Under the pieces are notes generated by a model, which saw nothing but the letters and a program-made list of their open reading frames with translations, ran no database searches and was not told the DNA's origin. 64,000 nucleotides of DNA, taken from Ruditapes philippinarum. Taxonomy: Eukaryota. The position numbers and the translations under genes were made by a program. Shown piece by piece: positions 4,800-52,610 of this stretch. Where the stretch lies: NCBI RefSeq assembly GCF_026571515.1, contig NW_026864618.1:62001-126000 (forward strand), in the 5' to 3' direction. Position 1 is the first letter of the stretch. Every line of letters starts with the position of its first letter.

Positions 4800-7700
4800 A
4801 CATAGTTTTACTATGTGAATAAAGCATTACCTCTTGGTCGTTACTATATTACAAACTCTGCAATATTAGCTTTACTCTGTTCATATGTCTTCACTGCGTT
4901 ATTGATAAAACGGGAATTATACTTATTACAGTGATCTTCAGATTTACCTAGCGTTTAAACTTACTTGCACAGAAAGTTTTGGTATTTTTGTTTCCATTTA
5001 AGATTTTTAAATGTTTGTTTTGCTCATGTCTTAAAATTGACTGAAATGGAATTACAAAAAGGAATATATTTTATTTTGCACTTTTTTGGAATTACATTTA
5101 TCAATTGTGAAACAAAAATAGCATCTATTGGATTACTTGATGATGCTCCGAAATATGGGACATATCCACATAAAAGCTCAAATGACCAATATATGGATCC
5201 TTGCAAAGCATGTAAGATTTATTTTTTCATTCTCATATATGTTCTTTTCTTCAAATTTTATGTCGATTTAAGCTGTGTTACAGTTTCGTCCAAATTTTAA
5301 ATGATTACTCTAGACGATTGACAAGTTTGATAAAATGAGTTAGTGTTCAGATAGATATAGGATGTTATTTCATAGAAATTTTTATAATTATTAATATTGC
5401 ATATTCTTTTAATTTGAAAAATGTTCTTTTACATACTATAAAAGAAGAAACTTAAAGTTTTATATTATTTTTATAAGGAAAAGACTTTAAAAAAACTTTA
5501 AAATGCCAAACATTAACATACTAAAATGATATGAAAATTTAAAATGTTGGCCGTTCATGTTGGTCACATTCATACCCATAAACTATTTAAATTTTCGGAT
5601 TTGAATAACAAATAACAGAACATTTCTTCTTTCATTACTAAGCACAATTCTTGAACAACATAAAACTACAAAAAAACGAGAATACAAAGAGAATGCAGGA
5701 AATAGGATATCTGCTTGTTTAGATTTTTGTTCTATTTCACAGATACATTTTAATTGAGTTATACTGATGCAAAAAAAAATGCGTTCTATAAACAAAACCA
5801 AATTAATTCTTTAGTACTAAGTTACACTGATGAGTTACTTTTATGTCTGAACTTCAAATTTTCGTTCATATATTTAGTATTTTTTACGTTTGGTATTTTA
5901 TAATACTTAAATTTATATCTATCAAATTTTATTTTTATCAAACACATTGAGTTCTAGATGAAAGGAATATAAACACGTAACTATTGTATAATTTTTTTTA
6001 ACATCATGAGACAAACGACCGTTTCTTATTAAATAGAAATTAAGTCTATATATATATATATATGTATATAAAAAAAAGGATTGTCAAATCAGTCCCTCTT
6101 TTTAGTCTCCAATAGGGTTTTGGACTGTTAATACTAAGATTATTTTATACAAATGCTGAATACATAAAAAATAGCATGTGACTTCTTTCATTCACTTTCT
6201 TTAAGTTGATTTTACACAATGACATTGTGGATAGAGACATGTTACGAACATTTTGTTTGATTGGTCCAACAAGACAATCCCGCTTAAAATCCTGTATAAG
6301 ATTTTTTTTACATCGAATAAAAAAACAACGTTTAGTTCGTTTGATCGAACAAAATAGGGCCACGAAAGAACACGTTGAACAATAAATTAACAGTTTGTTC
6401 GATCAAAATGCTATACAAAAGCATATTTAATTATATAAGGATCTTGTTGAAACGAATGAAAAAAACAAAAACAAAAAACTGACATATTATCCAATTGATC
6501 GAGCATAAAACGATAAATTACCACTGGAAATTGCACTGGAAATGTTTTGTTTTTGTTTTTGTATCGAACAGAACAAAACTAAAATCATAATAGAACACCT
6601 TGCTTATTTTGTTTCAAAAAGAAACATTTTAAACAAAAAAATGCTAATGTAGAAAATTTGTTTATGTATTATTGTGTTGTTTTTTTTCAAGCATGTATGC
6701 TTTGCACACTTTTGCTAGATGTAAACTTCTTCCAATTTTAGCATACTACTTCTTTGAGATAAACATTTACAGTAAACAAGTACCTTAGTAGAATTTGCTC
6801 TTTGATCGCCAGCCACACGTTAAACAAAATGCATTTTGAGTAAAATTAAAACACCAGATATTCGTGTAATTTTCAGTTAGTGGTATTGACATACAATTAC
6901 AAGACAGTTTCAATTAGAAATAATTTTGATAATAAGTGTCTGGTTTTGATGTTATTTGTTAGGATTACGACAGCAGTCTGTACAAATGATTTTGCTGACG
7001 ATGTTTTTAATTTATCGCTCTAACCACGCCGAGCTTTCAAACTTAGTACTTTATGAATTTTACATCGCAGTTTGTAATAAAAAGAATTGCATTTTTACAT
7101 TTCAGAAAGTTCCTTCCAAAATTCATTTGCTATTTTTACAGCATGTGTTTAAGTTTTTGAAAGACAAACTTTTAGGCTGGTTGTCTTAGTATCTGTTTGC
7201 AATGCAAAATGTCTAGCCTTAAATTGTAAATCATTATTTTATGTAATTTGATTGATTCAAGGAAATATTAATGGACGATTCTCAGGAAAGGATTCTCTGA
7301 AATGCATTATGACCAAAAAAATATTTCACTGAGGGTTTTTGACATGGCATGACTGCTGTCAACAATGTTTCAAGATTATTCTTCCATTTGATGTAGGATG
7401 CACAAATAACTTGTGATCAAAATTTCAAACCATACGCTCACACCTTTTTATAGAATATTTTTCTTATTGTGAAAAATGACCCAAAATTGAAAAGCATTGA
7501 AACGCTTTTCACTAAAATCGGAATAGAACTAGCACAAAGTCCGATTTTATTTCTGATTACATTTATTAATTATCTATTGCATATCATACAATTTTAAACG
7601 TCCTAACTGATCTTTGTAAGAAATTAAATTTTAAGATTTTAGGATTTACGACCTCAGTGGTGTACCTTTGATATCATTAAAAATGAATAAATTTAAAAGC

Positions 7701-7930
7701 ATTACAAAATGTTCCTTGATGTATTGTTTTTTACAACTTATCAACTGTTTTCGTTATTACATTGCAATTTCAACAGTCACATTTTATTGCTAACCTAATT
7801 ATTTTAATTCTGCTGATGCATCATCGAAACAAGAGCAGAACTATCTTTATACAGACACATATAGACAAAGCTTATTAGTTAATTATGATATGAAAACCAT
7901 TGCAAGACAACAAAACGAAATGTGCACGTT
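4800..7930 (+). repeat. Duplication unit A (promoter + exon 1 + 5' intron), paralogous to unit D (about 14890-17200)
   Basis: Colinear shared blocks, e.g. aagcattacctct..gttactata (4822/14907), gaatt(t/c)gct(c/t)tttgatc (6791/16332), catcatc(g/a)aaaca (7819/17094). Confidence 0.8.
5046..5211 (+). CDS. BMP1: BMP1/Tolloid first coding exon, variable copy A (intact): signal peptide + N-terminal propeptide
   Basis: ATG at 5046; MELQKGIYFILHFFGITFINCETKIASIGLLDDAPKYGTYPHKSSNDQYMDPCKA plus 1 nt (T), then donor GTAAGA at 5212. Phase 1 joins exon 2 (52361) to give DPCKA-Y-GFWGDIA, matching the BMP1/TLL prodomain motif DPCKAxxFxGDIA. Use in transcripts is not shown by the sequence. Confidence 0.75.
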
Positions 7931-8891
7931 TGAATAATACAATGCGGATAGGTAACGATACCATGTATCACATTTCCCCTATTCCATTTAACATTATTTT
8001 TCAGCAGGCAATCATCTTTTGAACAGAAGAAATCAGGTGTGTTTGTAGAAAACACAAGCATTTTATGTAATTGTTTTCGCGGAGAATACATCTGCACTTC
8101 CAGATACATATCTGTATTCTGTTAATGACATGAATATCATAAACTGTACTCTAAAACAGACATTTCACATCACACTTGATGATATTGAGACTTTTCATCA
8201 TTAATTACATTTAATGTATAAACACGTTTATTTAGCGCATATCTTTAAGCTTGAACCTGCGATTTTATTGTTTTATAGTTTGCTTCCTGCACATACGGTT
8301 TAGTTCTCAACACAATTGTCTTCATCCATGAAACAGATACACTACTGGTATTCATTTATTTGCCAAACCCTTTGAACAGAAACATTGATGGTAATCAAAT
8401 CGTTGCCTGTCCAGACTTTGCTTAATGTAAATATATTGATATCGAAATGTTAAAGTTCAATAAAATATAGTCGCAGCAATAGATAATTATTAAAGTTGGT
8501 TAATTGGCCTTGTGCTATTTTGTTACAGTTTTGTCAAGCGTTATAAATGTATGCACTTAGCAGACATTATAATATTACATTACCTATAGATGTTTATAGC
8601 TGTCTATATTAATTAATGATTATCAATAAGGTTAATTCTATATTATCTGCATTTGACTTCGTGTTAATTATCCTATCTAATTTTACACGCGTTCACAATG
8701 TGCATATTGTATCGTAAGGACATTCTTTCAGATGATTGATAAAGAAACAACCCTCCTCAGTGGTATTGTTTAACCATATTACAGTTAATATTCACTAAAG
8801 TGAGGATTATAAAGTGCCTTATTTATAGTATTCAGCAATTTGCTACAGTTTTGTGTAATAATTAGTAAATTTTATTTTCATTTGGATAAAC

Positions 8892-9063
8892 ATGAATATA
8901 ATTACATTGTCAGGTGTAATTTTTCAATCGTTTATGTTTTCAATAATTAAAAGTGATGTAGATATAAAACCCGCTTCTGTAGGATTAATTGAAGAAGCAA
9001 CACGATATGGAACCTATCCGCATAAAATCTCAGATGATTACTACATGGATCCATGCAAAGCTT
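8892..9063 (+). CDS. BMP1: BMP1/Tolloid first coding exon, variable copy B (intact, divergent signal peptide)
   Basis: MNIITLSGVIFQSFMFSIIKSDVDIKPASVGLIEEATRYGTYPHKISDDYYMDPCKA plus T, then consensus donor GTAAGT at 9064; phase 1, compatible with exon 2. Confidence 0.75.
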
Positions 9064-10910
9064 GTAAGTCAATTGATATTATGTATTATTTCATGTTATA
9101 TAAGCAATATTCTCTATATATGTGGTATTTCAAAGCATTATACACGTATATTTTAAGTATTACAAATATATATATAATTTTGCAAATCACTGAGAAGGCT
9201 TGATTGTGATACAATGTATTTACAATCATGTATTTATAATATTAATTTTAACTTGTGTAGAATAAAAAAATGTGTGACTTTTGTGTTGTATTGAAGTAGC
9301 ATAAAACACTTGAAACAAACTTTTAGATCTATTAACAATTCATTTCAATCCCAATTCTTAAATAAACAGACAACTGGAATTTCATGTTGCAAAGATAATG
9401 CATAACGACATAGTGTTTTTCTTTCAAAATATATTAAATCAAACACTCTCTATCTGTTGAAAAAGACTTTTTACCCTCAACATTCTGATTTTATGAATAA
9501 AATTACATATTGTTGACTGAAAATATTTTAAAAGAAATCTGATTTAATTCTTACAATCGTTTTCTATCACCTATAATTATCATTCATATCTACCCGGATT
9601 TCCGTCCACTTTAATCATCATTCGCGAGAAACCCGTGCATGTTAGAAATAGCACACACGTAGCAAATAACAAATATTTCTACGATGAAACCTGCAAACAG
9701 TATTTACTGACAGCTTCGTGTCAGCTCCAATTTGAGTAAATTTTAGTTAAAGGAGTCTGACGTTAACTCTTTTTTTGTGAATCCATGCTGAATGTTACAG
9801 GAAACATTTCTTATATCTGACAATAAATCGGGCCACGTTCGAAAAGTTTTTATCGGATGGTTGTACTTTAATAGAAAATTGTTATACAAAGAAACTGTTG
9901 TCGTTTCAATTCAGCCTTACCTTAAAACTCCAGCGTTAGATAATTAAAAAAAACACACACACAATTTTGATAAATCATCAAATCAAGTGTCTTAATATCT
10001 TTTGGTGGTTAGTTGAATTTATACACATATATACTTCTCTATACAAACGCTTTGATTTTATTACTATTTTGCAAGTGTTAACGATTTACTAGTCGTTTTC
10101 ATAATGAAATAATGTTTATGTTGTTTACACGATATTAACTTAAGGAGGAAAATAAAACTTTGAAATGTTGATATTACGTAATAATAAATGAAATATTGAT
10201 AGGCGTCAGTGCTCTCGATTGTCGAAGCAAAATATTAAAAAAGTAAATACTGCTTGGGGGTAAATTTCATTAGAGACATTACATGGGAAGTTAACAGTTT
10301 TGCATCAACGTATACTTTACAGCAGTACACGAAGATATTTAAAATATCCATGGCTCTGTTAAAGAATAAGATAGGTTAAATACTATAAGAGTGTACTTAA
10401 GCCTCATTAAAAATCCCATCAAAAGTTAGAGATATAATATCAAATCTAGTATAAATTATCTCATGTTCCGTTCCGAAGAGTCCCCTAATAACTTCTCTCT
10501 TTTATTATGACAATATGCAAGTTCACTATGTGATAAATTCTGATGAATAGGTCATGTTCAATTTTGTTACAGTTTAGTCAAGCGTTATACATTCTGCACG
10601 CAACTTACATTGTAAATGGCATTGCCTATATATTTTTATAGATGTTTTTAGTAATTAATGATTATCAATAAGGTTAATAGAATATTATCTTCAGTTGATT
10701 TAAAGTAATCTATTTTTAATTATTTTACACGCATTCACAATGTGCATGTTGTACTGTAAGGACGTTCTTTGAGATGACTGATAAAGAAGCAACCCTCCTC
10801 AATGGTATTGTTTAACCATATCTATAGTTTGCGGTATGCATATCGGTGCAAATTTATTTAGGGCCATACTTATTTTTTTTTAACTATTTGATACAGTTTG
10901 ATATAATATC

Positions 10911-11082
10911 ATGAATGTTATAACAATAACATTTGTACTTTTCCAATCGTTTATGGTTTCATGTATTAAATGTGATGTGAATATAAAACCCGCTACTGAA
11001 GGCTTAGTTGAAGGAGCACCACAATATGATACTTATCAGTCAAAAGTTCGAGATGATTACTGCATGGATCCATGGAAAGCTT
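10911..11082 (+). CDS. First-exon copy C (duplicate of B; frame open but DPCKA changed to DPWKA and donor weakened); functional or incipient pseudo-exon
   Basis: Hand translation from ATG 10911: MNVITITFVLFQSFMVSCIKCDVNIKPATEGLVEGAPQYDTYQSKVRDDYCMDPWKA plus T; donor reads GTTAAG at 11083 (one extra T relative to GTAAGT in B). Too short for the ORF track. Confidence 0.5.
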
Positions 11083-11435
11083 GTTAAGTCAAATGATATA
11101 ATTGATTATTTCAGGTTTCTCATAAAGCAATTTTCAATATATTTATCACATTTTATATTCAATATGCGGAACACGAAAATGTTATATGTATCTTTTTTGT
11201 AAAATCAATGAAAAGCTTGTATTTACTTGTGGTACCTGTCGGTAATATTTTGACACTCGTGCAAAAATTGTTGTGGTCGGTATTATTGTGTGTTGAAGTA
11301 AAATTAGAAATAAAATTTTATTAAGAATCCAATACGATCCCTGTCGTCCAGAACAGCTGGACCTTGTTGCTGAAAGTTGATATATAACAACGTACAGTGT
11401 TTTTCTTTCAAAATATATTAAAATCAAACGCTCTC

Positions 11436-11936: not shown

Positions 11937-12948
11937 AAACTCTCTCGTTCTGTTGACAAAGATTTTTACTGTTACCATTCTGATTTTATGACATATGGAA
12001 ATATTTCAAACTAAATAAGTATCGTTTTCTATCACCTATAATTATCGTTCATAGTTCCCCGGAATTCCGTCCACTTTGATCATCATTCACAATAAATTCG
12101 TACATGTTAGAAATAGGAAACACGTAGAATATAACAAAGATTTCTACGATGAAACCTGAAAACAGCATTTTCTGACAGCTCCGTGTCAGCTCCAATTAGA
12201 GTACAATTTAGTTAAAAGAGTCTGACTTTTACTCATTTATTGTGAATCCATGCTGAATGTTACAGGAAACATTTCTTATATCTGACAATAAATCGGGTCA
12301 CGTTCGAAAAGTTTTTATCGGATGATTGTTCTTTAATAGATAATTTCTATACAAAGAAACTGTTGTCGTTTCAGTTCGGCCTTAAATTAAAACTCTAACG
12401 TTAGATAATTAAAAAACTACACACAATTCTGATAAATCATCAACTCAAGTGTTTTAATTTCTTTTGGTGGTTAGTTGAATTTATATACATATAGACTTCT
12501 CTATAAACACACTTTGATTTTATTACTACTTTGCAAGTATTTACGATTTACTCGTCGTTTTCATAATAAAACAATGTTTATGTTGTTTACACGATATTAA
12601 CTTAAGGGGAAAAATAAAACTTTGAAATGTTGATATTATGTAATAATTAATGAAATATTGATAGGCGTCAATCCTCTTGATTGTCTTAGCAAAATGTAAA
12701 AAAGTGCGTGGGTTGAAAGTTCATCAGAGACATAACATGAGAAGTTAACAGTTTTACAACAACGTATCCGTTACAGTAATACACTCGTCTAGGGTCAGTA
12801 AATTTCGTTATACCAATTTATTTAATGAATTTAAATGCCTCCAGATTTACAATGATGCAAATTATAAGAAACTCCTGATAATGAAAAATCTGTTGTTCAA
12901 TAATAAATGATTTTACTACCTAGCTGTAAATAATACCAACCACGTATT

Positions 12949-12997
12949 ACTTTCAGCCACTGAGATTTATTCACTTTCAGCCACTGAGATTTATTCA
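12949..12997. repeat. 24 bp direct tandem duplication
   Basis: actttcagccactgagatttattc occurs twice in tandem, in the spacer of the large inverted repeat. Confidence 0.9.
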
Positions 12998-13329
12998 GAA
13001 GTAGGCAGTGTCACTTAAAGAACTAAAAAATCATTGTTGCAATCTATTTTTTATTATAAATTAAAAATATATATTTCTTTTACATTAGCCAATATTTTTG
13101 AGATATGCCGACACGTAAATGAATTGATAACATGAATATCAGACGTATTTATATAATAACAAACTATTTCTTTTACAAAAATATATCCTGGTGTGAATCT
13201 AGGACACAAAGAAGAACATTAACACTACTAAAAAAAAATGATTGTAACATCATAAATGCTACAAGATATGTTATCAATATTGGTAACATTTCTCGAAATA
13301 ATCATCAGGATATAACAAAAAATATATGT

Positions 13330-14379
13330 AAGATAAACATTTTCAAAGTTTTATTTTTCTACTTCAGTTTATATTATGTAAACCACATAAGCATTAGTTT
13401 ATCATGAATGCGGCGAGTAAATCGTAAACGCTTGCAAAACCCCCCAAAGTAATCAAAGTTATATGTATATTCAGAGAAGTCTATAAATATTTTTTTTTTA
13501 ATTTCTGAGTAAAAGAAAATTATAACACTTGAGTTGAATTGTATGTAGGTTTTTTAATTACTTCTCGTGGGATTTTAAGGTAAAGTTGAAATTAAACGGC
13601 AACATTTTTTTTGTATAACAATTTTACTGTTAAAGTACAATCATCCGATAATTACTTTCTGTATGTGACCCGATTTATTTTTTGACGTAAGAAACGTTTC
13701 TTGTAACATTCAGCAAACATTGACAATACAAGAGTAAACGCCAGACTCTTTTAACTAAAATTTACTCTAATTGGAGCTGACACGAAGCTGTAAGTTTTAT
13801 ATTCTTTACAGGTTTCATCGTAGAAATATTTGTTATATTCTCCGTGTGTGCTATTTCTAACATGCACGAGTTTCTTGTGAATGATGATTAAAGTGGACAG
13901 AAATCCGGGTAGATATGAATGATAATTTTGAGGTGATAGTAAACGATAGTTACTTCGTTTGAAATATTTCCAGTTATCATCAAATTAGAATCGTAGCAGT
14001 AAAAATCATTGACAACAGATAAGGAGCGTTTCAGTCTGACAAAAGTACAGATCTCTTTAGTTATTTCTTGCATGTAGATCTGATTGCCACCGTATTTGTT
14101 TCGCCTTCATTGTGATTTGGATTTCCCGAGAAAGCTATTTTTAGCCATGCAATCGTCCCTTACAGATAGGCATTAGACGAAGTATCAAACTATCGGTGTC
14201 CGTGAAAGTAAAACAAATTGTGTATTTTTGTTAGAAAAAAAAATTGTTTGTAGTTACAGTGTATTTGAAACAAACTGGAAATAATACACTCAATTCTGAA
14301 TGGGCAAGATCGTTTTGCCAGTTTACCTGCCTGTTATATTGACAACGCCATGTTTTGTTCTCACAAATCGTGAAAATTA
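13330..14379 (-). repeat. Inverted duplicate of about 11617-12640 (1 kb arms, ~0.7 kb spacer)
   Basis: Reverse-complement matches throughout, e.g. ggtggcaatcagatctacatgca (11877) vs tgcatgtagatctgattgccacc (14069); acaggcaggtaaactggcaaaac (11661) vs gttttgccagtttacctgcctgt (14312). Confidence 0.92.
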
Positions 14380-14845
14380 AAGTTATCAGGGGACTCTTCG
14401 AAACGGGACTTGAAATAGTTTTAGAATATTTGACATTTAATCTGTAACTATTGATGATATTTTTCAATGAGGCTTACGTATGTACTGTAATAGTATTTAA
14501 CTTTTCTTATTATTAACCTCGTCATGAATATTGAAAATACTTGACACTGTGTAAAATTTGAAAAATTAAACTCAATCTTTTCATAAGTAGAATTAATAAT
14601 ATATTCCAAAGTAAAAGACTTAGCCCGAGTCTCCGTAATATGTACGCTTTTAATATTTGCCTCATTCATTATCTTAATATAAACGAATTTGCGACATAAA
14701 TATGAAAGGTAATACTAAGTAAGACGCAGTGGACAAAAAGAACATTCATAATGGAACTGTTATCATTTTATTACCCGCTCGTGCAGCAAATGTCGTCTGA
14801 TTCAACTGCATACAGATATTTATCAATAAGTTCATTATCGTCTGC

Positions 14846-14936
14846 GCGTGACGTCGGGATCACTTCACTCTTTTATTACTACAATATACTTGTTCACTAT
14901 GTGATGAAGCATTACCTCTAGATCGTTACTATATAA
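14846..14936 (+). promoter_or_regulatory. Putative core promoter of copy D: CRE/ATF-like site + TATA box
   Basis: gcgTGACGTCg at 14849 and TATATAA at 14930 (81 nt spacing versus 87 nt in J), about 200 nt before the ATG. Confidence 0.55.
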
Positions 14937-15136
14937 CAAACTCTGCAATACTTGCTTTAATCACTTTATATTACTTTACTGCGTTATTGATAAAACGGTG
15001 TTTAAACTCTGCAGTGATCTTCAGGTTTTACAAAGCGTATAACTGGTTAGTGCATGCTTAACATGAATGTGAGCTTATTTTGTTTGATTTAAGATAGTTA
15101 AATATAAGGATATCTTAAGTTTTAAAATTAATTGAA

Positions 15137-15302
15137 ATGGAATTACAAAAGGGATTATATTTAATTTTGCAATTGTTTGGGATTACATTTATCAACTGTG
15201 AAACAAAGATAGCATCTACTGGATTAATTGAAGATGCACCGAAATATGGGACATATCCACATAAAAGCTCAAATGACCAATACATGGATCCTTGCAAAGC
15301 AT
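15137..15302 (+). CDS. BMP1: BMP1/Tolloid first coding exon, variable copy D (intact; sister of A)
   Basis: MELQKGLYLILQLFGITFINCETKIASTGLIEDAPKYGTYPHKSSNDQYMDPCKA plus T, donor GTAAGA at 15303, phase 1; upstream TGACGTC (14849) and TATATAA (14930). Confidence 0.78.
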
Positions 15303-18300
15303 GTAAGATTTTTTTTTTCCATTTTATTTTCAAATTTAATATTGATTTAGAAAATAGTGCTGTTTTTGTGTGTGAAGCTTCATTTTGATTTCCCTTAAAT
15401 GTTAAAATATATAAAGTGATTACATATAATTAATTATTGGATAATGATATTTAAGAGTTTTCTTTTATTTTTATTTTTAATTTTTAGATATCTCCTGTTG
15501 CACATTTTTGCCAAGCATTACTTATTATTCATATAACATACCATGCTCTACAACAATAATTATATTCTATAGTTTAATAGGGAGAAGGTTACCAATATAC
15601 GAAATTATACGAAATAGACAAAAAAATGTTTAAAACTATATCAAAATTTACAAACTTAAACTAAGATGTGAAGAATTTAAATGTTGCACGTGTAGGTTGG
15701 TTGCATTTATATTGGTAATTATTTAAATCTTCAGGATTTTAATAAAAAGAACACCTGTTCTTTCATAAAAAAGAACAGTTCTAGATTTCATTCATCAAAT
15801 AACATTTAAACCACAAAAATGATTAAAAAAGTGCAGGAAATAAGATATCTTTCCGTTTGGATTTTTGTCTATTTTACAGACAAACTTTTACTGAGTTACA
15901 TTGACACAAAAAGATTGCATTTCTAAACCAAACCTAATAAATTTCCCTGTTGATTTGATTTTAAATTGCTATCCATATTTTCGTATTTTCTTCTGAATAT
16001 TTATTATTTTTTTTAAAATGTCATTTCAAATATAGAATATTTTATATTTATCAATAATTTTAAATGGAATAGATAGAAACGTGGCTAAAGTATAGATACC
16101 GAAACGGCTGTTAATATCGTTGATTAATCTAAAGAGAATTGAAACCACTGGCTTTAAAACATTCAGTCAAAATAAATGTAATTAATTTGGAACGTCGTAA
16201 ATGTGTATAAATGAAATATTAATTAGATATTTAAAAAAACAACATTTTTGCACAATTTGACTCAATATTTCCTCGAATTTCTTGCTTTTAAACACTGAGA
16301 TGAAAACATAAAAAAAAACAAGTTCATGTGGGAATTCGCTTTTTGATCTCTAGCCATTTGCGGCACAGAATGAAGTTTGGTATGAAAGACACGAAATAAA
16401 CCAGATATTCATGATAATTTCTGTCGGTAGTATTAACAGACATGTACATGACAGTTTCAATTAGAGTTAATTTTGATTATGAGTGTCTGGTGATGATGCC
16501 TCGTGTTAGGATATGGTTTGCTTTCTATGCAAGTGATTTCTGCTGACGATTAAATGTATCGCTTTTAACAGACCAATAATTCAAGCATAGTTATTTCATT
16601 GGAATGGGTTGAAATTGTTTGGTAGTTAATGCATTTTTGTATCGCAATGAACAATTAATATAATTGCATGCTAGAAATTTCTTTACACTTTACATTTTGT
16701 AATTTCTGTCAGCATTTGTTACACTTTGTAAATATCGAGTTAAACCAAATTTACAAACTAAATGTCCTATGAGTTAAAGGAAAGCAATAACAAATGCAAT
16801 GTCTCCAACCTTAATTTTGCTAACCATTTTTCTTGTATTTTGATTCCTTCTGTTCAAGAAAATACAGACGGGCTTCAGGTCAAATACCCCTAAAATGTAT
16901 AGCGTCACATGTACAATTATATTTTAAACATTGTTAGAACAAAACGGAAACTAGATCAAAATCATGTATAAAGATATTCTTCAATGTATAATTGAAAAGT
17001 ACAACTCATCGCCCTATTTTCTTGACATGACGGCATTGCAATATTTACCTATACAACTAATTGTTTATTGTGTGTACTTTATCAATTTGATACATCATCA
17101 AAACACCAGCAGAAATATGTAGACACGGAAACATGCAGACAAAATCCTAACAGTACATTATGATATCCAAATCTTTGTAAAAAAACGACATATGCACGTC
17201 TAAAAACATGTAAGACAATGTCATCATGCATAAGTATTTACTGACAGGTTCTTGTCATTTCAAATTTAGATACATTTTGGTTAAAGAACCCTTTGCGAAA
17301 TACATTTGTTATGCCAATCTTACTGCTCTTCTTTATTTCAACACAATACATTTGTATTACTGAAAACTCTTTACGGTCAAATTCCTTGTCAGCGTTTCAT
17401 AGAAAAGCTTAAGTTTATCCTAAGTTTTATGACCATGAAATCAACTTTAGGACTTACTTAAGACCGTTTCAATAAATGTTTTTTTTACCTTCAGTCAAAG
17501 ACTAGACTATCATTTAATTCATTTTCCTGAGTAAGGTTAAGAAGTGCAATGGCACACCCTTTTATTATCAATCTGTCAGTGCTCATCTGTATTTCTGTTC
17601 AGAAATTAAAAGGGCCATGAAATAGGAGACATAAGTTAAGACGGTTTCTGATCTCAGTTTTGATTTTAAGACTGATTTTGTACAGAGGACTTCCAATGGA
17701 TCCGTCACTAAAAATTAAAAGTCAACATGAGAAAGAAGTTAACTTGTCCAATTTATGAAACGTTAAACACATCATGTTGACCCCGACGTTGTCTTTGCTC
17801 CAATTTAACAAATACAAATTTATATCCTGAAATTCTAAATTCTTTTTTAACAGACATGTTGCAATTGTATAATTGATTTAATTGGAGCTGAAACGAAGTT
17901 TTATTAATAAATATTATAAGATATTTCCCGCGAAACGTAACATTTGGACTCGAAACAGACATTTTTATCCATACAGTTGTTTTACAATTATAACATGGTG
18001 TTCTGCTTCCTGTATATGTGAACGTTTTATTCAACACCATCAGGTCCCTGGAACACATGTAGCAGATTAATTTGTAGATGAAAAATGCATATTCAGCGAA
18101 ACTATAATCACGAAGAGTACTTAAAGTCAATTATCAATTAGATTTATTTAATAAACGATATCATATCTATGCCTAAGTATTCTCTCCAAAATTGAAAAAT
18201 TGTCCTTAGTATTTAATTTACTTCAAACCCAACCTGTCCTATCTCTAAATCATTTTAATTGCGTAAGCGCATTATATTATTTCATATATTACTTATATGA

Positions 18301-23655: not shown

Positions 23656-23706
23656 TCCACATTAAACCTCCTCAAATGACCAATATCCTTGCAAAGCACG
23701 TAAGAT
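23656..23706 (+). pseudogene. First-exon relic E (3' fragment only)
   Basis: tccacattaaacctcctcaaatgaccaatatccttgcaaagcacgtaagat aligns to the end of copies A/D (tccacataaaagctcaaatgaccaatatatggatccttgcaaagcatgtaagat) with small indels; ATG and signal-peptide part are deleted, GTAAG donor retained. Confidence 0.75.
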
Positions 23707-27650: not shown

Positions 27651-27812
27651 ATGGAATTACAAAAAGAATATGTTCTATTGTTGTGCGTTTTACTGCATAT
27701 ATTTTACAGTTTGTCTCTATTTATTGTGGACTGAAAACATCATCTCGTTATTCTTAAACAAGTATATGCAAGTATGATAATCATTATTTATTAAACGATC
27801 GTCCATGAAAAA
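27651..27812 (+). pseudogene. First-exon relic F (highly diverged)
   Basis: Starts gaaATGGAATTACAAAAAG as in A/D (MELQKEYVLLLCVLLHIFYSLSLFIVD then stop); a ccatgaaaaagtaag remnant lies about one exon length downstream; homologous promoter module upstream (TGACGTC 27325, TATATAA 27393). Confidence 0.6.
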
Positions 27813-27831
27813 GTAAGACTCTTCTATCTGT

Positions 27832-31187: not shown

Positions 31188-31354
31188 ATAGAATAACAAA
31201 AAAGAATACATATCATTTTGCATTTGATAGCAATAACTTTTTCTAAACTGTGATTCCAAAAACTGATATGTTGGATTTAATGAGGATGCACCTAAATTTG
31301 AAACTTATATGCAAAAGCTATCAAATGATGAATATATAAATCCATGCAAAGCAT
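31188..31354 (+). pseudogene. First-exon relic G (full length, inactivated)
   Basis: ATG changed to ATA, in-frame stops, a +1 frameshift and no GT donor; 3' part still reads VGFNEDAPKFETYMQKLSNDEYINPCKA. Confidence 0.85.
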
Positions 31355-34300: not shown

Positions 34301-34374
34301 ATATTGAGAGTTATTTGTTTTAAATTGAGGTAAACATTCTTTGTGTTTATTGATAAATTAACAATTAACTAGAA

Positions 34375-34530
34375 ATGGAATTACGAAAAGAACATTTTCT
34401 ATTGTTTTGCGTTTTGTTGCATCTATTTTATTGTTGGCCTCTATTTTATGTAGACTTAGAGTTACATCTTTTCTTAAGTCTTAAACAATAATTCTGTATG
34501 ATAATCATTGTTTACCCAACGGTCGTCTTT
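34375..34530 (+). pseudogene. First-exon relic H (duplicate of F)
   Basis: ATG 34375: MELRKEHFLLFCVLLHLFYCWPLFYVDLELHLFLSLKQ then stop at 34489-34491; upstream flank nearly identical to that of F; no DPCKA or donor. Confidence 0.6.
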
Positions 34531-36894: not shown

Positions 36895-37061
36895 ATACAA
36901 TAACAAAAAGGAATAAATATCATTTTGCATTTGATTGCAATAACTTTTTATAAACTGTGATTCCAAAAACTGATATATTGGATTTAATGTAGATGCACCT
37001 AAATATGGAACTTATATGCAAAAAAACTCAAGTGAAGAATATATAAATCCATGCAAAGCAT
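36895..37061 (+). pseudogene. First-exon relic I (duplicate of G, inactivated)
   Basis: Shares the ATG-to-ATA change, stops and frameshift of G; 3' part reads IGFNVDAPKYGTYMQKNSSEEYINPCKA; donor lost (gcattctag). Confidence 0.85.
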
Positions 37062-44616: not shown

Positions 44617-44905
44617 TAAAGGCACACTAGACCCCAGAAATGCTTTTATTTCTTATTCGTTAGAAGCTTTTATTTTTTGTCGTCCTGTTATAGTTTCCAA
44701 AAAGTTACTCATTTGTCCCATCACCTGAACCATCTTTTGCTTCTGTTGCTTTTTTTGGCAATCAGTAGAAATATAGTAGTTTCGTATTTTGTAGGAAAGT
44801 AAAAAAACTAATATGTTTGCATTTTTGCTACTTTCAGGACAGATATATTCACATTCAGCGCTACTTTCTTCATATGATAAGCATCTAAAAAGCTCTAAAA
44901 CCATT
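44617..44905 (-). mobile_element. Dispersed MITE-like repeat family copy
   Basis: ttaaaggcacactagaccccagaaatgcttttattt...gttactcatttg...ttttggcaat is the reverse complement of 25190-25335. Confidence 0.65.
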
Positions 44906-45154
44906 ATTTAAATGTTATTATAATTGTTCAGTTCTGTTATTATTGAAACTATTGTTTGCCCTTTGTAAACTGTGAAATAAAATATTCTTTTCTGAAGCAT
45001 AATTTGCCTTTAAGTTGTAATATGTCTTTATAAAAATACATTCTCTTGTCTATAAATGGTTTGTCCATAAAAAGTTCAAACAATTAAACAGATACTCAGT
45101 TAATCAGAGACTTGCTTGATAAACGTAAATAAAAAAAGATACCTTAAATGAAAA

Positions 45155-45293: not shown

Positions 45294-47050
45294 TCGGGCT
45301 AACGATATTTAAACTTAAATTTAATTTTTGTATGCTTCAGTATACTGGAACGCAACGGATGAAATTTCTCCGGACATCTGTTATAAAAGTGCAGAAATTT
45401 TTTTATGCTCGGCAAATACTGTGGAACATTGAGGTTATTATTCTATATCAAATATGTTTGATTAGGAAGATCTAGTCATTAATTTGCACTTTTAATTTCA
45501 CTTGATGCCTTTGTGTGGTTGTTCCCATCTGTTAGCAACAAAATCAGGGTATTAGTTTTCGGTAAAATCGTTTTCATGACACAAAAGCATGATTAATATT
45601 GGTTTGTTTAATTGCCAATTTGAAACCTTACCCTGAAAATGTGTGAACTATCCACGCAGAAAATTTTACAACAATACCGCAGTAGCATCTAATATCTTCA
45701 ATATTTCATTGTTTATTAACATGTCAGTTTTGTTATTTTACCCGTTGATGTATAAATTATTTGACATTAATAAAGTTTAAAATAGACACTGAAAAGTTTT
45801 ATTTCATGGTTTCCAATGACGCGGATGCTTTGACCGACAGAACTGAGGTCTCAGACATAAATTTAGCAGTTAACCAATCAAATTGCTCATCAGGACGGAA
45901 CGCTTTCATTGAGGACTGCGCAAGCGTGAAATGAAGCGCTCGCGTCAACGCAGTTTGACAATCATAACGCTTCTGCTGATCGGTGATGATAGGAGAGGGG
46001 GTAACCCTAATGGGATTTGAAGCGCAAATCAGACATTGTTATTTTGACGGCATAAATGGTTCGGTAACATTTTGTCCCACTTTTAAAAGTCATAGAAATA
46101 AAGCATAGGAATGGCATTGATGTTATAAAAGACATACCCATATAATTTACATTTATTTCTTATAGAATTCTAAACAAAAGTTGTTGTTTTTGCTTTCTTT
46201 ATAAAAAGAGTCTATATATCAAGAAATATAATCACGCGTACATTTTGTATTTAATTTTTCTGATTTTACGTTATAAGTAAACTATTAGATAGGCTTGAAT
46301 GCTTTTTTGATCCGGTATTGGAAAGACAGAATGGAAAATAACGCTGCGGTCGCCTTATCGTTCACATAATTCACACTTTGGTTTAATTTCACATTTATTA
46401 AGGTCCCATTGTGGTTTTTGTGGTCAACAAGATCCTTGGAGAAAATTTTACGACAATCTGCAAGCGTGATAACCAGACGAAGATCTTGTTACAGCCTTTT
46501 ACATTACCCACTAGACTCTCGTAAATGGTTTCATGTCAAAATTACAATGTCTGACAAAAATGTTATCTTTTACATTCACTCAGTGTACCCAATTTTTATG
46601 GAGTAGTATTATTAATACAGTAAAGCTTTTGATACATTTTTTTTTTTGTATTTAAAAAAAATGATTTTTTTTATCTATTTCGTTGTGAAAAGATTTACAG
46701 GCACTTTCAGATTTACGAAATAGATTTTTTTCAATCATGATAAAAAATGTAGTGTGACTTTGTTTATGTTGACATTGAGAGGCAGTAAAACGCTCAAAAT
46801 ACATTTGCGCAGTTGAAAAAATAATATATTTAAGCATGATTTGCCAAAAGGCTTAATAAATCTCTGGAATTAATTAATAGAAAAAAACCAACACGTAGGC
46901 CGAGTGTATAATAAGGGTGCATCTACTTAATTTTCATTCAATGAGATATCCAGTAAATATTATTAATATCAGTTTTACAGAGAGACACCAGAGTGGTTTC
47001 ATTCACCTGTTCATGGAAGAAAGGGAACTGTTAAGTTCATCTTAGCCTAC

Positions 47051-47147
47051 GCGTGACGTAGCGGCAACTATCCTAAAGTGTTATTGTACACCGGTTTACC
47101 GTGAGAGTATTATATTGTGAAACTTGCTCTCTGCGTTTGCTATATAA
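47051..47147 (+). promoter_or_regulatory. Putative core promoter of copy J: CRE/ATF-like site + TATA box
   Basis: gcgTGACGTAg at 47054 and TATATAA at 47141, about 280 nt before the ATG; the same arrangement recurs upstream of paralogous copies. Confidence 0.55.
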
Positions 47148-47426
47148 CCAACACGGCAATGCTTGCTTTTATAAATAATTGTTACCTCGCTACGCTAAGC
47201 TATTGAAGTTTAAATAAGAGTGTTATTTAACACCCTACTTTAGTTAACAACTTATTTGTGTTATTGTAAGGGTTTGATTTAAGGGTTTTACTTTAAACAA
47301 ACTTCTTTATTGTGGCTCTTTCTCTCCAGACTGAGCACGGATTAATGTGATAGCGAGATATAGGTGTATTATACATTAAGATAAACGTATATAGAAATAA
47401 ACCGTCACTTTATCATATTACTGAAA

Positions 47427-47592
47427 ATGGAGCTTCGGACAGGGATTTATTTCATTTTACAATGTTTTGGAATTTCTGTTATTAATTGTAATATTAAACC
47501 TGCTACCGTTGGATTAATTGAAAATGCACCGAAATATGGGGCATATCCATATAAAAGCTCGAATGACAAATACATGGATCCTTGTAAAGCAT
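47427..47592 (+). CDS. BMP1: BMP1/Tolloid first coding exon, proximal copy J (intact)
   Basis: Hand translation: MELRTGIYFILQCFGISVINCNIKPATVGLIENAPKYGAYPYKSSNDKYMDPCKA plus T, donor GTAAGT at 47593; nearest copy to exon 2; absent from the ORF track because a stop follows within the intron. Confidence 0.9.
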
Positions 47593-48624
47593 GTAAGTAA
47601 AATATCATTATGATATATTTAAAAAGATATAGAAAACTAAATATTATAGTATTTATGTTAAAGAAAATTTATACATACAGTTTGCTTTTGTGTTTGTTTT
47701 GCCACATGCTGAGTGCATTAAATGCATATAAAATATATTATAAAGGCCTTCAGTAAATTAGTTAATGTTAAGTATGGATTAGGAGCATACATTTCTCCGC
47801 ATGAACATTTTATCTTTTTCTTCATCCGGGCATTTTACCCTTATATTCGTCATCAAAAGAATTATAAAAATGCATGTATCTATTATTCCGTTTACATTAA
47901 GCCATTAATAGTCAGACTTAAGTTTTTGTTGTGATTTTTTTTAATTCAGCCAAAATTTTATCTATATCGTTTTTACAGATGTCTATAGTAATAGGTAAAG
48001 TTTCTATAAGAAATTGATATCATCTATGCGTGTTTTTGTGTGTGTTTTTCGTTCATTTTAGGTCGTATTTTAGTGGATTTTGTAGTTGATTAAGATATAT
48101 TATTAAGGTATATTTGGGAACTCTCTTAGCCTGTGTAGTGTCAGAATTTGTAATACTGTAAATAATGAATGTTTGAATTGACATTCTATCTGTTTTCTCT
48201 CGATTTTTATTCCAACCGAGAATGTAAAAACTGACAAGCGGGAAGGTGTTTTCTTAAAAGAAGACTTTCATAGTAAAATAATTGCTCCTGACAAAATATA
48301 AATTAAAGCAACATTATCCATAAAAGTTAAGGAAAAAATAGCTTGAAACTTTATCCTTATTGATATAACTAATTATATCTGTTTACATGTAAAGATTTAT
48401 TATATTATCTGTGTCTGTACGATGTGTTTAGATAGAAATCATTTCTGTGCGTTCTTCTGTTCTGTTATAATAAGTACATCCCCAGTTGTGCGGTCTTGTG
48501 TGGTCAAAGTTAACAAGAACTCCGTTAAGATGTCTGTGTCTTCATATACAGTAAATTAGTGGGTCTGTAAAGCAGATAATACATACAAGATAATAATATA
48601 TACATACATAATTGTCATGACATT

Positions 48625-48712: not shown

Positions 48713-51700
48713 TCTTTAAAATCAGAAGCGCTAGAAGTTTTCATGACAATTTTTAAGAAGAAAAAACATATTTTGTTGGTGTTGTTGTTGTTGAATTATT
48801 TTTTCAGAGCGTTACGACAGTCTATCCCCTTCCAAAAATAATTTGTACTAACGTACTTATGTACGCCACTACACCATTTCAAAATATAGTATTTTCTTAA
48901 GTGTTCACAACTTTGACATGAAGATATTGCAAGTTAAATTGCTTTGCTGGTACTAAAATTGGGGGAGAAAAAAAACTTGCGTAAAAATTCTACTAGATCC
49001 TATCTGTACGAAAATGATGTTACGAGATCATAATCTTTACGGCCTATGAAAATTTCTGATCAGTATCTTTATTATCTTTTACACTGTTAACCAACCGGTG
49101 TACATTGTTGTGAAAGAAAGAAAAGTGTGCAAAGTACATTGCGTAGAAGAAGAAAAAAGACCCTTTTAATGTACCGGTATACTAAAATCAGGTCGTGTGG
49201 TTTGGTTTTCTAGTGCATATAGAGTAACAATACTTTCGTTTACATTGATGTAAGTGATGAACGATTTGTCCTTGTCTTTAAAAGTTTCAGCATGATATCT
49301 TATATTAATTAATGAACTGAGAGCTTTTTGTTACTTATCGTTTTAGAAAACCTTTAATATAGTTAACTATTTTGTTAACACACCGACTGGCCGTGATTGT
49401 ATTTCAACGCTTACCCGCTCTCCACAAGCAGATATCGACTTATCCACTTGAAATGTTCAAGAGTGGAAAAGAGCGGTACAAATCAAAATATTTTTTATTC
49501 CATTATTTCAACCGCAGCGCAAAAAAGCAAACCATAAGCAAGCGCTCTTTTTGTCGAAACGTGTTCAATGAGCCTGAAGCAGAAGTTGCACGGAATTCTC
49601 GTGTAGATTGTTCGATTTGATATTTCCCTAGATGAGCTCAAGTATACCCCAAGAATAGAATCATATCATTTTTCACTGCTTTTCTCATTAAACCGAGTGA
49701 CCCGTAACAAATTTACTTGGATGAAACTATCGTACCTTTATGAACTATCTGAAATTTGATAAAAAAAAAACTCAATATTATTCCAAAGACTTCTGTGTTT
49801 ATTCCGCATAGACATGCATTCGTCATATCAGGTTATTCAATTAAGCAATTATACAATGTTCCGACGTTATCATTCTAAATAATTCTCATTTCGTATAAAA
49901 CATACCGATTGACGTTTTACATCCATTAATTTTTCTCTCTCTCTCTCTTATTTTTTTTCATTTTGTTAGATTGATCGACAGCTAAACATTTATCAATCAA
50001 ATGATAAACTGTCTATTCCACGGAGATTTTACATCATCGTAACAAGAAGAGATTAGTTTAACATCAGGTTGTTATGGGAGGGATTCATCTTCTAGATTTT
50101 GAAAAGTTTATGTACACGTGTTTTATTGACTAGTTTCTTAGAATATAAAACAAAAACTTTCTGCAGTAAACTTGACGTAACTGGAGATCGAACTTACAGA
50201 ACCCATCTTAATTAAAACAGCAATTATTTAAAGGCGGTATGGACAATGTTTAATTCTTGACTGTGACAGAATATATACATTTTGAAATTAAATATGGTGC
50301 ACGAAGTTCATTTTATTGCTTTTGCATTTATATGTAATTGTAGAATTCTACATTTTGCCTGTGACATTTAACTTTATTCCAGTAGTGAAATAAGTTTGTA
50401 AAAAAATATAAGAAATAGGTACGTGAAAAAATATGTTTTTTATGTACTAGTAGTATCGCACATGAGTTAGCATATAATGAAAATTATACCGTGGAAAAAA
50501 TTGTTATAAAGCGAGCCTCTGGTCAGTTATTCACATGACGTCATTTGGTCAGCTGAGTAGTGTTAAACTTATTTGAATAACTATCAGGCAACGCAAGGGG
50601 TCAGGAAAGGAGCAGAAAAACATGTAAATGTACAAGTATATCAAAATAGCTAGTGAACTTAAATAAACCGCCATTACAACATTTATCTCCCTAATATTTT
50701 AAATTTAAAATATCAAAAAATGGAATAGATACTTTAAAGCAGTTCTACTTTTACGTGCTTCACGTGCACAACGGTAAATGAAGATGACTGAACGATGTTA
50801 TTTATATGCTATTTAAACGTAATTGCATTACAGTATGCTTTCTGGAAGGATAAATATCAAATATATCGTATTCACCTTATTGCGATGCAAACACAGTGTT
50901 GCATGTGGGAAAAACCTGCAGACGCTCACTGGGTTTGATCATTATTCTGTAATGGTAACATTTAGAATTAAAATAAGCCGCAGTAAATAGCATGATGTCT
51001 TAATAAACGCTCGTCTCATTTCAAAGTGGCAAATGAACTGTGAATAAACGAGAGAAAATATCTCGTCTGCGTGGTAGGTTTTTTTGCCACTCGTTTGTTT
51101 GTTTACTTCCTTGATAGTATAACATGAGACAACCTTTTTTTAATTATCGTTCTTAAACGATCTCAGGTTTTTGATAATTATGCTCTTTTCATCTATGTGT
51201 AAAGTTTCCATTAGTGTTTCTTATGGTATCACACTACTAAATAAAACTATTAAATTACTTACGTGCTTTATTAGGAATGTGAAATCTAAAAATGATCAAA
51301 GCATCATATTAAAACTTTTCATTTTAGAAACTAAGTGTGTGTGTGTAATGTTGTTGTTGTTATTTTGTGTGTGATTTTTTTTGAAGTTTAATTTACAAAA
51401 GGTTTTAAGGTAATTGTCTTTGAACAAAGAAAATACATAAATGCTTTTTTTAATTTGCAAAAGGGCTTTAGGTAATTGTTTTTCAACAATGAAAATACAC
51501 AAATGCATTCACAGTACATGTTTTTTTACAAACCATTCAGTATGAATGTAGAAAAAAGTTATTTCATTCACTCAAAAGGATTTTTCATACTATATTTTGG
51601 CGAATAACAACAGTGATATGTAGAACGGACAACATTAAAAAATACATTTTACATTTTGCTGGAGAGTTCTTAGTAAAATATCATTGCAGTGCTTTTGCTA

Positions 51701-52360
51701 TAGTGTTTTGTACAAATTTGCCCGAAAAGTGATTACAATACAGCTGTCTATTTCTAACATATAGATGTCAGACGCTGTTCCATTACACTGTCTTCATTTA
51801 ATGGCCGCCATTAATAGCTTATCTGGACACGTGGACGAGGAAAAAGTACCACAAGCATACTCCCAAACCGATGATTGTCTTTGATTACAAACGATTGCCG
51901 GCAATACTATGGTCATTCCATTTACCATAAAGTTTATTTCCGCGTTTATTAACCCCGTAATTGTAGCAATAGTGTCCAAACACTATCCGAAGAGACATCT
52001 TAATGGCGACATCTCGTTGTAATAACCTAAACGTGATCTCATTACGAGACCTTAATGAGACTTGGTTTTCTCTCATAAAAGGTTTAATGCTAAAATTACT
52101 ACAATTACTGCCTAAATAAAAATTGCGAAATTGTTTTAGTTCAATCGTTTCATGTTTTAGAAGCTATGCCTATCTTTTAATAGGGACATTGCTTAGATAC
52201 GACAAAAAGAAATGACACGAATTAAAAAAAGAAAATTGTGATGAGGTTTCCATTCATGTCCGTCCGTTCGTTCGTTTGAAGGTTTTCCAAATTTGCAAAA
52301 TTGTTTTTTGAATTTTATCACGTTTGATAAACACACTACAAGTATATTGTATATTTTCAG

Positions 52361-52610
52361 ATGGATTCTGGGGAGATATTGCCATGTCGGAGGAAGAATA
52401 TAATACATTTAAAAATCAAGAATATTTAGAAGAAAAGATGGAAACATCTATTTATGATCTTCAAATTGAAGACCCCTTAACTATGTATGGTGGGGGAAAG
52501 GGGCCATATTCCCATTTAGACAAAGAAAAAGAAGAAAAAGAAAAGAAGATGAGTAAAAATCACAAAGATAACAAGAAAAAGAAGAAAACAAGAAAAAGAT
52601 GTAGTAAAGG
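52361..52610 (+). CDS. BMP1: BMP1/Tolloid exon 2 (prodomain with FWGDIA motif, acidic then Lys-rich)
   Basis: Acceptor ttttcAG ending 52360; (Y)GFWGDIAMSEEEYNTFKNQEYLEEK...KKKKKTRKRCSK(G); donor GTATGC at 52611, phase 2. Confidence 0.92.

What the first reader, a model, noticed from the sequence alone, without database searches (positions are those of the whole stretch)
4800..52610. Protocadherin/UGT1A-like array of variable first exons upstream of a single BMP1/Tolloid constant region
Seen: at least 10 same-strand paralogues of the signal-peptide exon over 43 kb (5046, 8892, 10911, 15137, 23656, 27651, 31188, 34375, 36895, 47427), but only one exon 2 and one catalytic region in the window. 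Four copies keep an ATG, an open frame, DPCKA and a phase-1 T/GTAAG donor that splices in frame to exon 2. Established: the variable-first-exon plus constant-exon design with promoter choice is known for clustered protocadherins and UGT1A; BMP1/Tolloid proteases process chordin/Sog, procollagen and other matrix substrates. Inference: this locus may drive one protease from several independently regulated promoter/leader cassettes, all giving the same mature enzyme after furin cleavage. I do not know of this being described for a tolloid gene, but cannot search the literature.
Basis: partly seen in the sequence, partly recalled or inferred. Interest (0 to 1): 0.95.

Follow-up and report, generated by a model that had tools for sequence, protein, structure and literature searches.

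The report
Tolloid gene with duplicated first exons
A single BMP1/tolloid protease gene in an AT-rich animal genome is preceded by about twelve tandem copies of its promoter-plus-first-exon cassette; five are intact and under purifying selection, so they probably act as alternative first exons, though no RNA evidence could be obtained.

Summary
The window has seven clear same-strand copies of the signal-peptide exon (A 5046, B 8892, C 10911, D 15137, F 31189, G 36896, Z 47427). It also has three short relics (23656, 27651, 34375). Two more copies lie 8-11 kb upstream of the window. All copies sit on this one contig. Exon 2 and the catalytic exons are single-copy in the 1.4 Gb genome.

Five cassettes (U1, A, B, D, Z) keep the ATG, an open frame, the DPCKA motif and a phase-1 T|GTAAG donor. 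Their exons are far better conserved than their flanks, have no indels, and show dN/dS of about 0.1-0.4. The other seven are decaying. Each cassette carries a locus-specific upstream block with a TATA box and a CRE-like site. That block is shared with the proximal cassette and with a distant relative's single copy.

This fits a birth-and-death array of promoter-plus-first-exon cassettes feeding one constant region. All isoforms should give the same mature enzyme.

Use of the upstream cassettes in mRNA is inferred, not shown.

I rate it a new member of a known kind (multiple variable first exons). Unchecked first-reader notes of this scan, s1-794032 and s1-794109, cover the same stretch; other such notes report similar arrays elsewhere in this genome.

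The parts
4807..4913 (+). Cassette A: remnant of the upstream promoter-like block (TATA-like TATATTA; the CRE-like site is lost)
   Evidence: 86% identical to the D block, and the block is found only at this locus. Alignment A2.
5046..5211 (+). Cassette A first exon: ATG, signal peptide, ...YMDPCKA, phase-1 donor T|GTAAGA. Intact.
   Evidence: An identical exon appears in the independent JGI ORF P0005.
8600..8790 (+). Cassette B: B-type upstream conserved block
   Evidence: 87% identical between B and C and 72% between B and U2, against 49-61% in neighbouring sequence. Locus-specific.
8892..9063 (+). Cassette B first exon (B type, with a 2-codon insertion): ATG, open frame, DPCKA, donor T|GTAAGT. 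Intact.
   Evidence: dN/dS is 0.11-0.18 against the A-type copies and Z. A B-like ORF, P0011, is in JGI data.
10911..11082 (+). Cassette C first exon, probably dead: DPWKA (Cys lost), donor GTTAAG, conserved YG/YPHK residues changed
   Evidence: dN/dS is 0.8-1.1 against B and 2.4 against U2.
14790..15010 (+). Cassette D: upstream promoter-like block (TGACGTC at -288, CTATATAAC at -207 from the ATG)
   Evidence: It is 78% identical to the U1 block, against 53-61% for the adjacent UTR and intron.
15137..15302 (+). Cassette D first exon. Intact.
23656..23700 (+). Relic of exon 1 (internal deletion; donor CGTAAG kept)
27651..27680 (+). Relic: only the ATGGAATTACAAAAAG start of exon 1 is recognisable
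   Evidence: Unit-level homology 27291-29767 versus 33979-36086.
31189..31354 (+). Cassette F, dead exon (ATG lost, in-frame TGA, donor lost); its promoter-like block is still recognisable upstream
34375..34405 (+). Relic: only the start of exon 1 (MELRK) is recognisable
36896..37061 (+). Cassette G, dead exon, a recent duplicate of F. Exon and flanks are equally similar (86-94%), which is neutral evolution.
47040..47275 (+). Cassette Z (proximal): promoter-like block with TGACGT at -373 and TATATAA at -286, then the start of the 5' leader
   Evidence: The leader segment is 72% identical to the upstream region of a distant relative's single exon 1 (L008).
47427..47592 (+). Cassette Z first exon (the proximal, presumably ancestral one), donor T|GTAAGT
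52361..52610 (+). Exon 2, first constant exon: acceptor ttttcag|AT, then GFWGDIAMSEEEY (the FxGD propeptide motif). Single copy in the genome.
54690..63561 (+). Further constant exons: Lys/Arg-rich propeptide ending in RTKR|AAT, astacin catalytic exons ([24 protein letters not shown]) and the first CUB exon. The gene continues beyond the window.
   Evidence: ORF translations. CUB domains confirmed.

Best explanation
The 5' end of a single BMP1/tolloid-type gene (promoter, 5' leader, ATG/signal-peptide exon and its splice donor) was repeatedly duplicated in tandem. The result is a ~59 kb same-strand array of about twelve cassettes upstream of one exon 2. The array evolves by birth and death. 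Five cassettes are intact and selectively maintained as coding first exons: U1 (just outside the window), A, B, D and the proximal Z. Seven are decaying. The most likely working is promoter choice. Transcription starts at one cassette, and that cassette's cap-proximal donor is joined, in phase 1, to the only available partner, exon 2 at 52361. The later cassettes have donors but no required acceptor, so they are removed with the intron. The isoforms differ in promoter, 5' UTR, signal peptide and about 30 N-terminal propeptide residues. The FxGD propeptide motif, the RTKR cleavage site and the enzyme itself are constant, so the mature protease is the same. The gain would be regulatory: the same enzyme under several independently evolving promoters. 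SHOWN: the architecture, the copy numbers, selection on the exons, and the conserved upstream blocks. INFERRED: promoter activity, splicing to exon 2, and the regulatory purpose.
For: (1) Nine clear copies and three relics lie on the same strand of one contig. Exon 2 is unique in the genome, and no relics of exons 2-5 lie in the array.
(2) U1, A, B, D and Z keep ATG, open frame, DPCKA and T|GTAAG in the phase that fits exon 2.
(3) Exon identity far exceeds flank identity: A-D 92% against 64-66%; A-U1 and D-U1 83% against 45-61%; copies against Z 74-78% against 38-53%. The dead pair F-G is equally similar in exon and flanks, at 86-94%.
(4) There are no indels in the 166-nt exon among U1, A, D and Z. 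Flank indel rates predict 3-6 events, giving P0 of 0.002-0.05.
(5) dN/dS is 0.19-0.40 among U1, A, D and Z, and 0.11-0.18 for B against them. At dS of about 0.9 to Z, a neutrally evolving partner would give a pairwise ratio of 0.5 or more. Changes on the terminal branches of U1, A and D are 11 synonymous to 15 non-synonymous, where 19% synonymous is expected (p = 0.006).
(6) A 170-nt upstream block with a CRE-like TGACGT and TATATAA lies 200-370 nt before the ATG in U1, D, F, G and Z, and is weaker in A. It is better conserved than the leader next to it. B-type cassettes have their own conserved block. Both blocks occur only at this locus. Z's leader and D's CRE region align to the upstream region of a distant relative's exon 1.
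(7) Related species also hold several distinct intact exon-1 ORFs, all reading 'DPCKACK', which means the GTAAG donor is kept. P0006 is A-like. P0009 shares the B-type two-residue insertion.
Against: There is no transcript evidence of any kind, not even for the proximal Z-to-exon 2 junction. Every database protein matching exon 1 or exon 2 is a genomic ORF that reads on into the intron. The selection tests rest on 55 codons, and single branches are weak (A: 2 synonymous to 4 non-synonymous). Cassette A has lost the CRE-like site, and its upstream block is no better conserved than its flanks. The species of origin of the related ORFs are unknown, so 'several copies in one related species' is an assumption. 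A more distant relative (L008) shows a single exon 1 within about 10 kb. An acceptor-like site (polypyrimidine tract plus CAG, ending at 47332) in Z's leader could capture upstream transcripts unproductively.
Confidence: 0.6

Rival explanations
1. The upstream copies are silent relics of tandem duplication. Only the proximal cassette Z is ever used, and the intact look of U1, A, B and D is chance or recent loss of function.
For: Seven of the twelve copies are plainly dead. No spliced product was found in any protein collection. Cassette A's promoter-like block has decayed. The more distant relative has one copy within 10 kb.
Against: dS to Z is about 0.9, yet the frame, ATG and donor are intact and there are no indels, where flank rates predict 3-6 events. 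Pairwise dN/dS is about 0.2, where 0.5 or more is expected if one partner were neutral. Terminal-branch changes are enriched for synonymous ones, p = 0.006. The really dead copies (C, U2, F, G) behave differently.
Confidence: 0.2
2. The upstream cassettes are transcribed and under selection, but not as tolloid first exons. They might splice to other, unrecognised exons, make short secreted peptides on their own, or yield non-productive or regulatory transcripts, for example by splicing into the acceptor-like site ahead of Z's ATG.
For: Selection on the exon shows coding use, not the splice partner. An acceptor-like tract ends at 47332 (alignment). Splicing a phase-1 donor there would run into a stop at once.
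Against: Exon 2 is the only known in-phase partner, is unique in the genome and lies downstream on the same strand. No other conserved block or ORF above the neutral background lies between cassettes. Sequence just after each donor diverges with indels, so a read-through peptide is not conserved. The donor itself is conserved in every intact copy and in all relatives.
Confidence: 0.15
3. The array is an assembly artefact: haplotypes or reads were mis-joined into false tandem copies.
For: The assembly is fragmented (15,874 contigs).
Against: The copies are 8-40% diverged, with different flanks, indels and states of decay. Copies A and B recur in an independent JGI data set (P0005, P0011).
Confidence: 0.02

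Closest known systems
Multiple-variable-first-exon clusters of vertebrates (UGT1A, clustered protocadherins alpha/gamma, GCNT2), as described in PMC1885805 and the work it cites (Zhang, Haws & Wu 2004; Wu & Maniatis 1999)
   Same: A tandem same-strand array of paralogous first exons, each with its own upstream block and 5' splice donor, lies upstream of one set of constant exons. It evolves by birth and death, with pseudo-exons and relics among the working copies.
   Different: In those clusters the variable exon encodes the business end of the protein (substrate-binding domain or ectodomain), so the array diversifies the protein. Here it encodes only a signal peptide and about 30 propeptide residues, and the mature enzyme is unchanged. 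Usage in mRNA is not shown here. The gene family (astacin/tolloid) and the host (an AT-rich invertebrate-like genome) are different.
Genes with several alternative promoters and leader exons (for example NOS1, plectin and the glucocorticoid receptor, listed in PMC1885805 as multiple-first-exon genes)
   Same: Several first exons, each with its own promoter, give essentially the same protein under different regulation. This is the closest match in purpose.
   Different: Those first exons are mostly unrelated, often non-coding leaders. Here they are coding paralogues made by recent tandem duplication and kept under purifying selection.
BMP1/mTLD, TLL1, TLL2 and Drosophila Tolloid/Tolkin (from my own knowledge of the family)
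   Same: The domain plan is the same: signal peptide, propeptide with DPCKA...FxGD, furin-type site RTKR before AAT..., the astacin zinc motif and Met-turn, then CUB domains.
   Different: Known isoform diversity of BMP1 arises at the 3' end (BMP1 versus mTLD). I know of no report of an array of duplicated first exons, and two full-text searches found none.

Membership tests
BMP1/tolloid subfamily of astacin metalloproteases | Astacin zinc-binding motif HExxHxxGFxHExxRxDRD and Met-turn SxMHY | tested here: met
   Read directly from the ORF translations: [19 protein letters not shown] (58095-58313) and GSIMHYARN (60716-60976).
BMP1/tolloid subfamily of astacin metalloproteases | Propeptide with a furin-type site directly before the mature N-terminus AAT...PER.W..GVIP, and the FxGD propeptide motif | tested here: met
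   The sequence reads ...MVRTKR|[19 protein letters not shown] and exon 2 starts GFWGDIAMSEEEY. The role of FxGD as a latency switch rests on my own knowledge of astacins.
BMP1/tolloid subfamily of astacin metalloproteases | CUB domains C-terminal to the catalytic domain | tested here: met
   Pfam CUB (PF00431) hits with E 6e-10, 2e-21 and 2e-37 on three downstream exons.
BMP1/tolloid subfamily of astacin metalloproteases | EGF domains interleaved with CUBs, and the full CUB-CUB-EGF-CUB-EGF-CUB plan | not tested
   Only the first about 20 kb downstream was fetched, and the EGF exons were not sought.
Multiple-variable-first-exon cluster (protocadherin/UGT1A type) | Tandem same-strand array of paralogous first exons upstream of one shared set of constant exons | tested here: met
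Multiple-variable-first-exon cluster (protocadherin/UGT1A type) | Each variable exon has its own promoter | tested here: inconclusive
   A conserved, locus-specific upstream block with a TATA box and a CRE-like site sits in most cassettes, and B-type cassettes have a separate block. Promoter activity was not measured.
Multiple-variable-first-exon cluster (protocadherin/UGT1A type) | Each variable exon ends in a 5' splice site whose phase fits the first constant exon | tested here: met
   U1, A, B, D and Z end in T|GTAAG, phase 1. Exon 2 supplies the other two bases of the codon.
Multiple-variable-first-exon cluster (protocadherin/UGT1A type) | mRNAs exist that join each variable exon to the constant exons | not testable with these tools
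No spliced protein is in the collections.
Multiple-variable-first-exon cluster (protocadherin/UGT1A type) | The variable exon diversifies a functional part of the mature protein | tested here: not met
   The variable exon holds only the signal peptide and about 30 propeptide residues, upstream of the RTKR cleavage site.
Multiple-variable-first-exon cluster (protocadherin/UGT1A type) | Birth-and-death evolution with pseudo-exons and relics | tested here: met
   Five cassettes are intact and seven decayed. F/G are a recent neutral duplicate pair. C and U2 show dN/dS of about 1.

The most novel reading that the evidence does not exclude
Several upstream cassettes are live promoters, each with its own tissue or stage pattern, all splicing to exon 2. 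That would make this a protocadherin/UGT1A-style promoter-choice array serving a developmental protease of the BMP/chordin pathway. The variable N-terminal propeptide and signal peptide might add isoform-specific secretion or latency. This genome may use such first-exon arrays widely, since first readers of this scan flagged several others.
Probability: 0.45. Interest if true: 0.65.

Novelty: new member of a known kind. Interest (0 to 1): 0.5.

Why it matters
Tolloid proteases set the shape of BMP gradients and process matrix precursors, so when and where they are made matters. A set of duplicated, independently evolving promoter-plus-leader cassettes in front of one enzyme would show regulatory subfunctionalisation without duplication of the gene. 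This kind of layout is mostly documented in vertebrates. If the other arrays noted in this genome are real, the lineage could be a good system for studying how variable-first-exon loci arise. If the upstream cassettes prove silent, the locus is only a tidy example of tandem duplication and decay.

Tried and rejected
**RNA evidence**

**Searches for spliced products**
- I searched with the exon-2 ORF, exon 1 of cassette A, A's 113-aa open frame scored on the exon part, which reaches proteins of 62-198 aa, and a profile of six window/locus copies plus three relatives against 1.84 billion representatives.
- Every hit is a genomic ORF that runs on into the intron; none is spliced. Because of length limits and 50% clustering, this blank says little.

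**Other checks**
- Capture and dispersal by a mobile element is rejected. The exon copies and both upstream blocks occur only on this contig.
- Gene conversion from Z as the cause of intactness is rejected. The A-type copies are at dS of about 0.9 from Z.
- Duplication of larger gene pieces is rejected, because no relic of exons 2-5 is present.
- The exon-1 peptide tree was too poorly resolved to date the duplications. Only the B-type clade and A+P0005+P0006 have some support.
- Literature searches for a tolloid/BMP1 first-exon array found nothing.
- The organism was not identified.
Full report
**What is there**

The window is AT-rich (27-34% GC). It corresponds to G000:C13105:62001-126000 of a 1.4 Gb genome in 15,874 contigs.

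At its 3' end lies a BMP1/tolloid-type gene.
- The first coding exon (47427-47592) reads MELRTG...YMDPCKA and ends in a phase-1 donor T|GTAAGT.
- Exon 2 starts at 52361 behind ttttcag and reads (Y)GFWGDIAMSEEEY.
- Later exons hold a Lys/Arg-rich propeptide ending in RTKR|[19 protein letters not shown].
- They also hold the astacin motif [19 protein letters not shown] and the Met-turn SIMHY.
- Three downstream exons match Pfam CUB.

**The array**

Protein, DNA and profile searches with exon 1 find strong same-strand copies.

| Cassette | Window coordinates |
|---|---|
| A | 5046-5213 |
| B | 8892-9065 |
| C | 10911-11084 |
| D | 15137-15304 |
| F | 31189-31354 |
| G | 36896-37061 |
| Z | 47427-47594 |

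- There is an internally deleted relic at 23656-23700.
- At 27651 and 34375 only the first ~25 nt of the exon survive, inside units whose flanks match the F/G units.
- A six-frame search of the whole genome finds copies only on this contig. Two lie upstream of the window:
  - U1, at contig 50678-50845, is intact.
  - U2, at contig 53879-54019, has a stop after its ATG.
- Exon 2 is unique in the genome.
- The array holds no relic of exons 2-5.
- The duplicated unit is therefore the 5' end of the gene only. The array spans about 59 kb.
- The next thing upstream is a long retroelement-like ORF.

**State of the copies**

- U1, A, B, D and Z keep ATG, open frame, DPCKA and T|GTAAG.
- C has DPWKA and a GTTAAG donor.
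- U2, F and G have stops or lost donors.
- There are two sequence types. A-type comprises U1, A, D, F and G, with Z related. B-type comprises U2, B and C, and carries a two-codon insertion.
- The order U1-U2, A-B-C, D suggests that an A+B pair was itself duplicated.

**Evidence for selection**

- In the multiple alignment, exon identity far exceeds that of the 5' leader and intron:

| Pair | Exon identity | Leader and intron identity |
|---|---|---|
| A-D | 92% | 64-65% |
| A-U1, D-U1 | 83% | 45-61% |
| copies vs Z | 74-78% | 38-53% |
| F-G (dead pair) | 90% | 86-89% |

- Among U1, A, D and Z the 166-nt exon has no indel. Flank indel rates predict 3-6 events, giving P0 of 0.002-0.05.
- Nei-Gojobori dN/dS is 0.19-0.40 among U1, A, D and Z.
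- dN/dS is 0.11-0.18 for B against them.
- dN/dS is 0.7-2.4 among C, U2 and B.
- dS to Z is about 0.9. If the upstream lineages had drifted, the pairwise ratio should be 0.5 or more.
- Changes assigned by parsimony to the terminal branches of U1, A and D are 11 synonymous to 15 non-synonymous, against 19% synonymous expected (p = 0.006). Single branches are weak.

Conversion from Z cannot explain the intact state at that divergence.

**Upstream blocks**

- A ~170-nt block lies 200-370 nt before the ATG in U1, D, F, G and Z, and is eroded in A. It holds TGACGT(C/A) and CTATATAAC.
- It is better kept than the leader next to it: D-U1 78% against 53%.
- B, C and U2 share a different block: B-C 87% and B-U2 72%, against 49-61% nearby.
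- Both blocks occur only at this locus.
- A marine-metagenome contig from a more distant relative (L008) has one exon 1 in about 10 kb. Its upstream region aligns to Z's leader (72%, E 7e-11) and to D's CRE region.

These blocks are therefore plausibly the gene's ancestral promoter and leader, copied along with the exon.

**Relatives**

- All database proteins that match exon 1 or exon 2 are short genomic ORFs. Those with exon 1 read '...DPCKACK', which means the GTAAG donor is kept.
- They include an exon identical to A (P0005) and a B-like one (P0011) from JGI data, so the copies exist in an independent data set.
- From other sources come an A-like ORF (P0006), one with the B-type insertion (P0009) and others.
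- Their species are unknown, and the tree is poorly resolved.

**What could not be done**

Not even the proximal junction is confirmed by RNA.

**Reading**

The best explanation is a birth-and-death array of promoter-plus-first-exon cassettes feeding one constant region. Five cassettes are maintained by selection. Exon 2 is the only in-phase partner and lies downstream on the same strand, so use as alternative first exons is the most economical account (about 0.6).

All isoforms would yield the same mature protease, because the variable part lies before the FxGD motif and the RTKR site. The likely gain is regulatory.

The layout is that of the multiple-variable-first-exon clusters (PMC1885805). 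In purpose it is nearer to ordinary alternative-promoter genes. Two literature searches found no such array reported for a tolloid gene.

First readers of this scan flagged several other first-exon arrays in this genome. Those notes are unchecked.

Noticed in passing
L002:1655-5104 (contig C13105:43655-47104; about 3.5 kb upstream of cassette U1): A stop-free frame of 1,150 aa on the + strand, preceded by shorter overlapping frames. It looks like a non-LTR retrotransposon and marks the upstream limit of the array. It was not scanned against Pfam.
   Followed up: no
window 25038-25332, 27860-28193, 44636-44918, 57286-57579: A ~330-bp interspersed repeat, present in both orientations. The first look found more than 6,000 candidate copies genome-wide, and the scored copies are 82-89% identical. 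It is SINE- or MITE-like.
   Followed up: partly
window 9441-10330, 11937-12784, 13325-14379 (inverted); contig 54471-54745: A ~0.9-1 kb locus-specific segment follows each B-type exon (B, C, U2). One inverted copy lies between C and D, which points to an inverted duplication inside the array.
   Followed up: partly
window 47300-47332: A Z-specific insertion in the 5' leader ends in a good acceptor-like site (ctttctctccag|A) 95 nt before Z's ATG. It could be an acceptor for an upstream non-coding exon, or it could trap transcripts from upstream cassettes; a phase-1 junction there meets a stop at once.
   Followed up: no
window 10488-10537: A 50-nt fragment of the A-type promoter block (84% to D) lies about 400 nt upstream of the B-type cassette C. 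B-type units may therefore derive from A-type units by insertion or replacement of the leader.
   Followed up: no
window 52519-52610 and 54690-54950: The propeptide holds long Lys/Arg/Glu-rich low-complexity runs (KEKEEKEKK..., [30 protein letters not shown]...). This is far longer than in the vertebrate BMP1 propeptide as I recall it.
   Followed up: no
other pieces of the same genome (notes s1-811292, s1-803701, s1-792524, s1-803717, s1-803704, s1-811301, s1-803760): First readers flagged several other 'variable first exon' arrays in this genome, involving a lipoxygenase, a GPCR, a claudin-like gene and signal-peptide leader exons. If real, tandem duplication of first exons is a genome-wide habit here. 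These notes are unchecked.
   Followed up: no
L008:5001-5171 (ENA marine metagenome contig OREC01000935): A more distant relative (37% GC) has a single intact exon 1 with a GTAAG donor, and no second copy or exon 2 within 5 kb on either side.
   Followed up: partly
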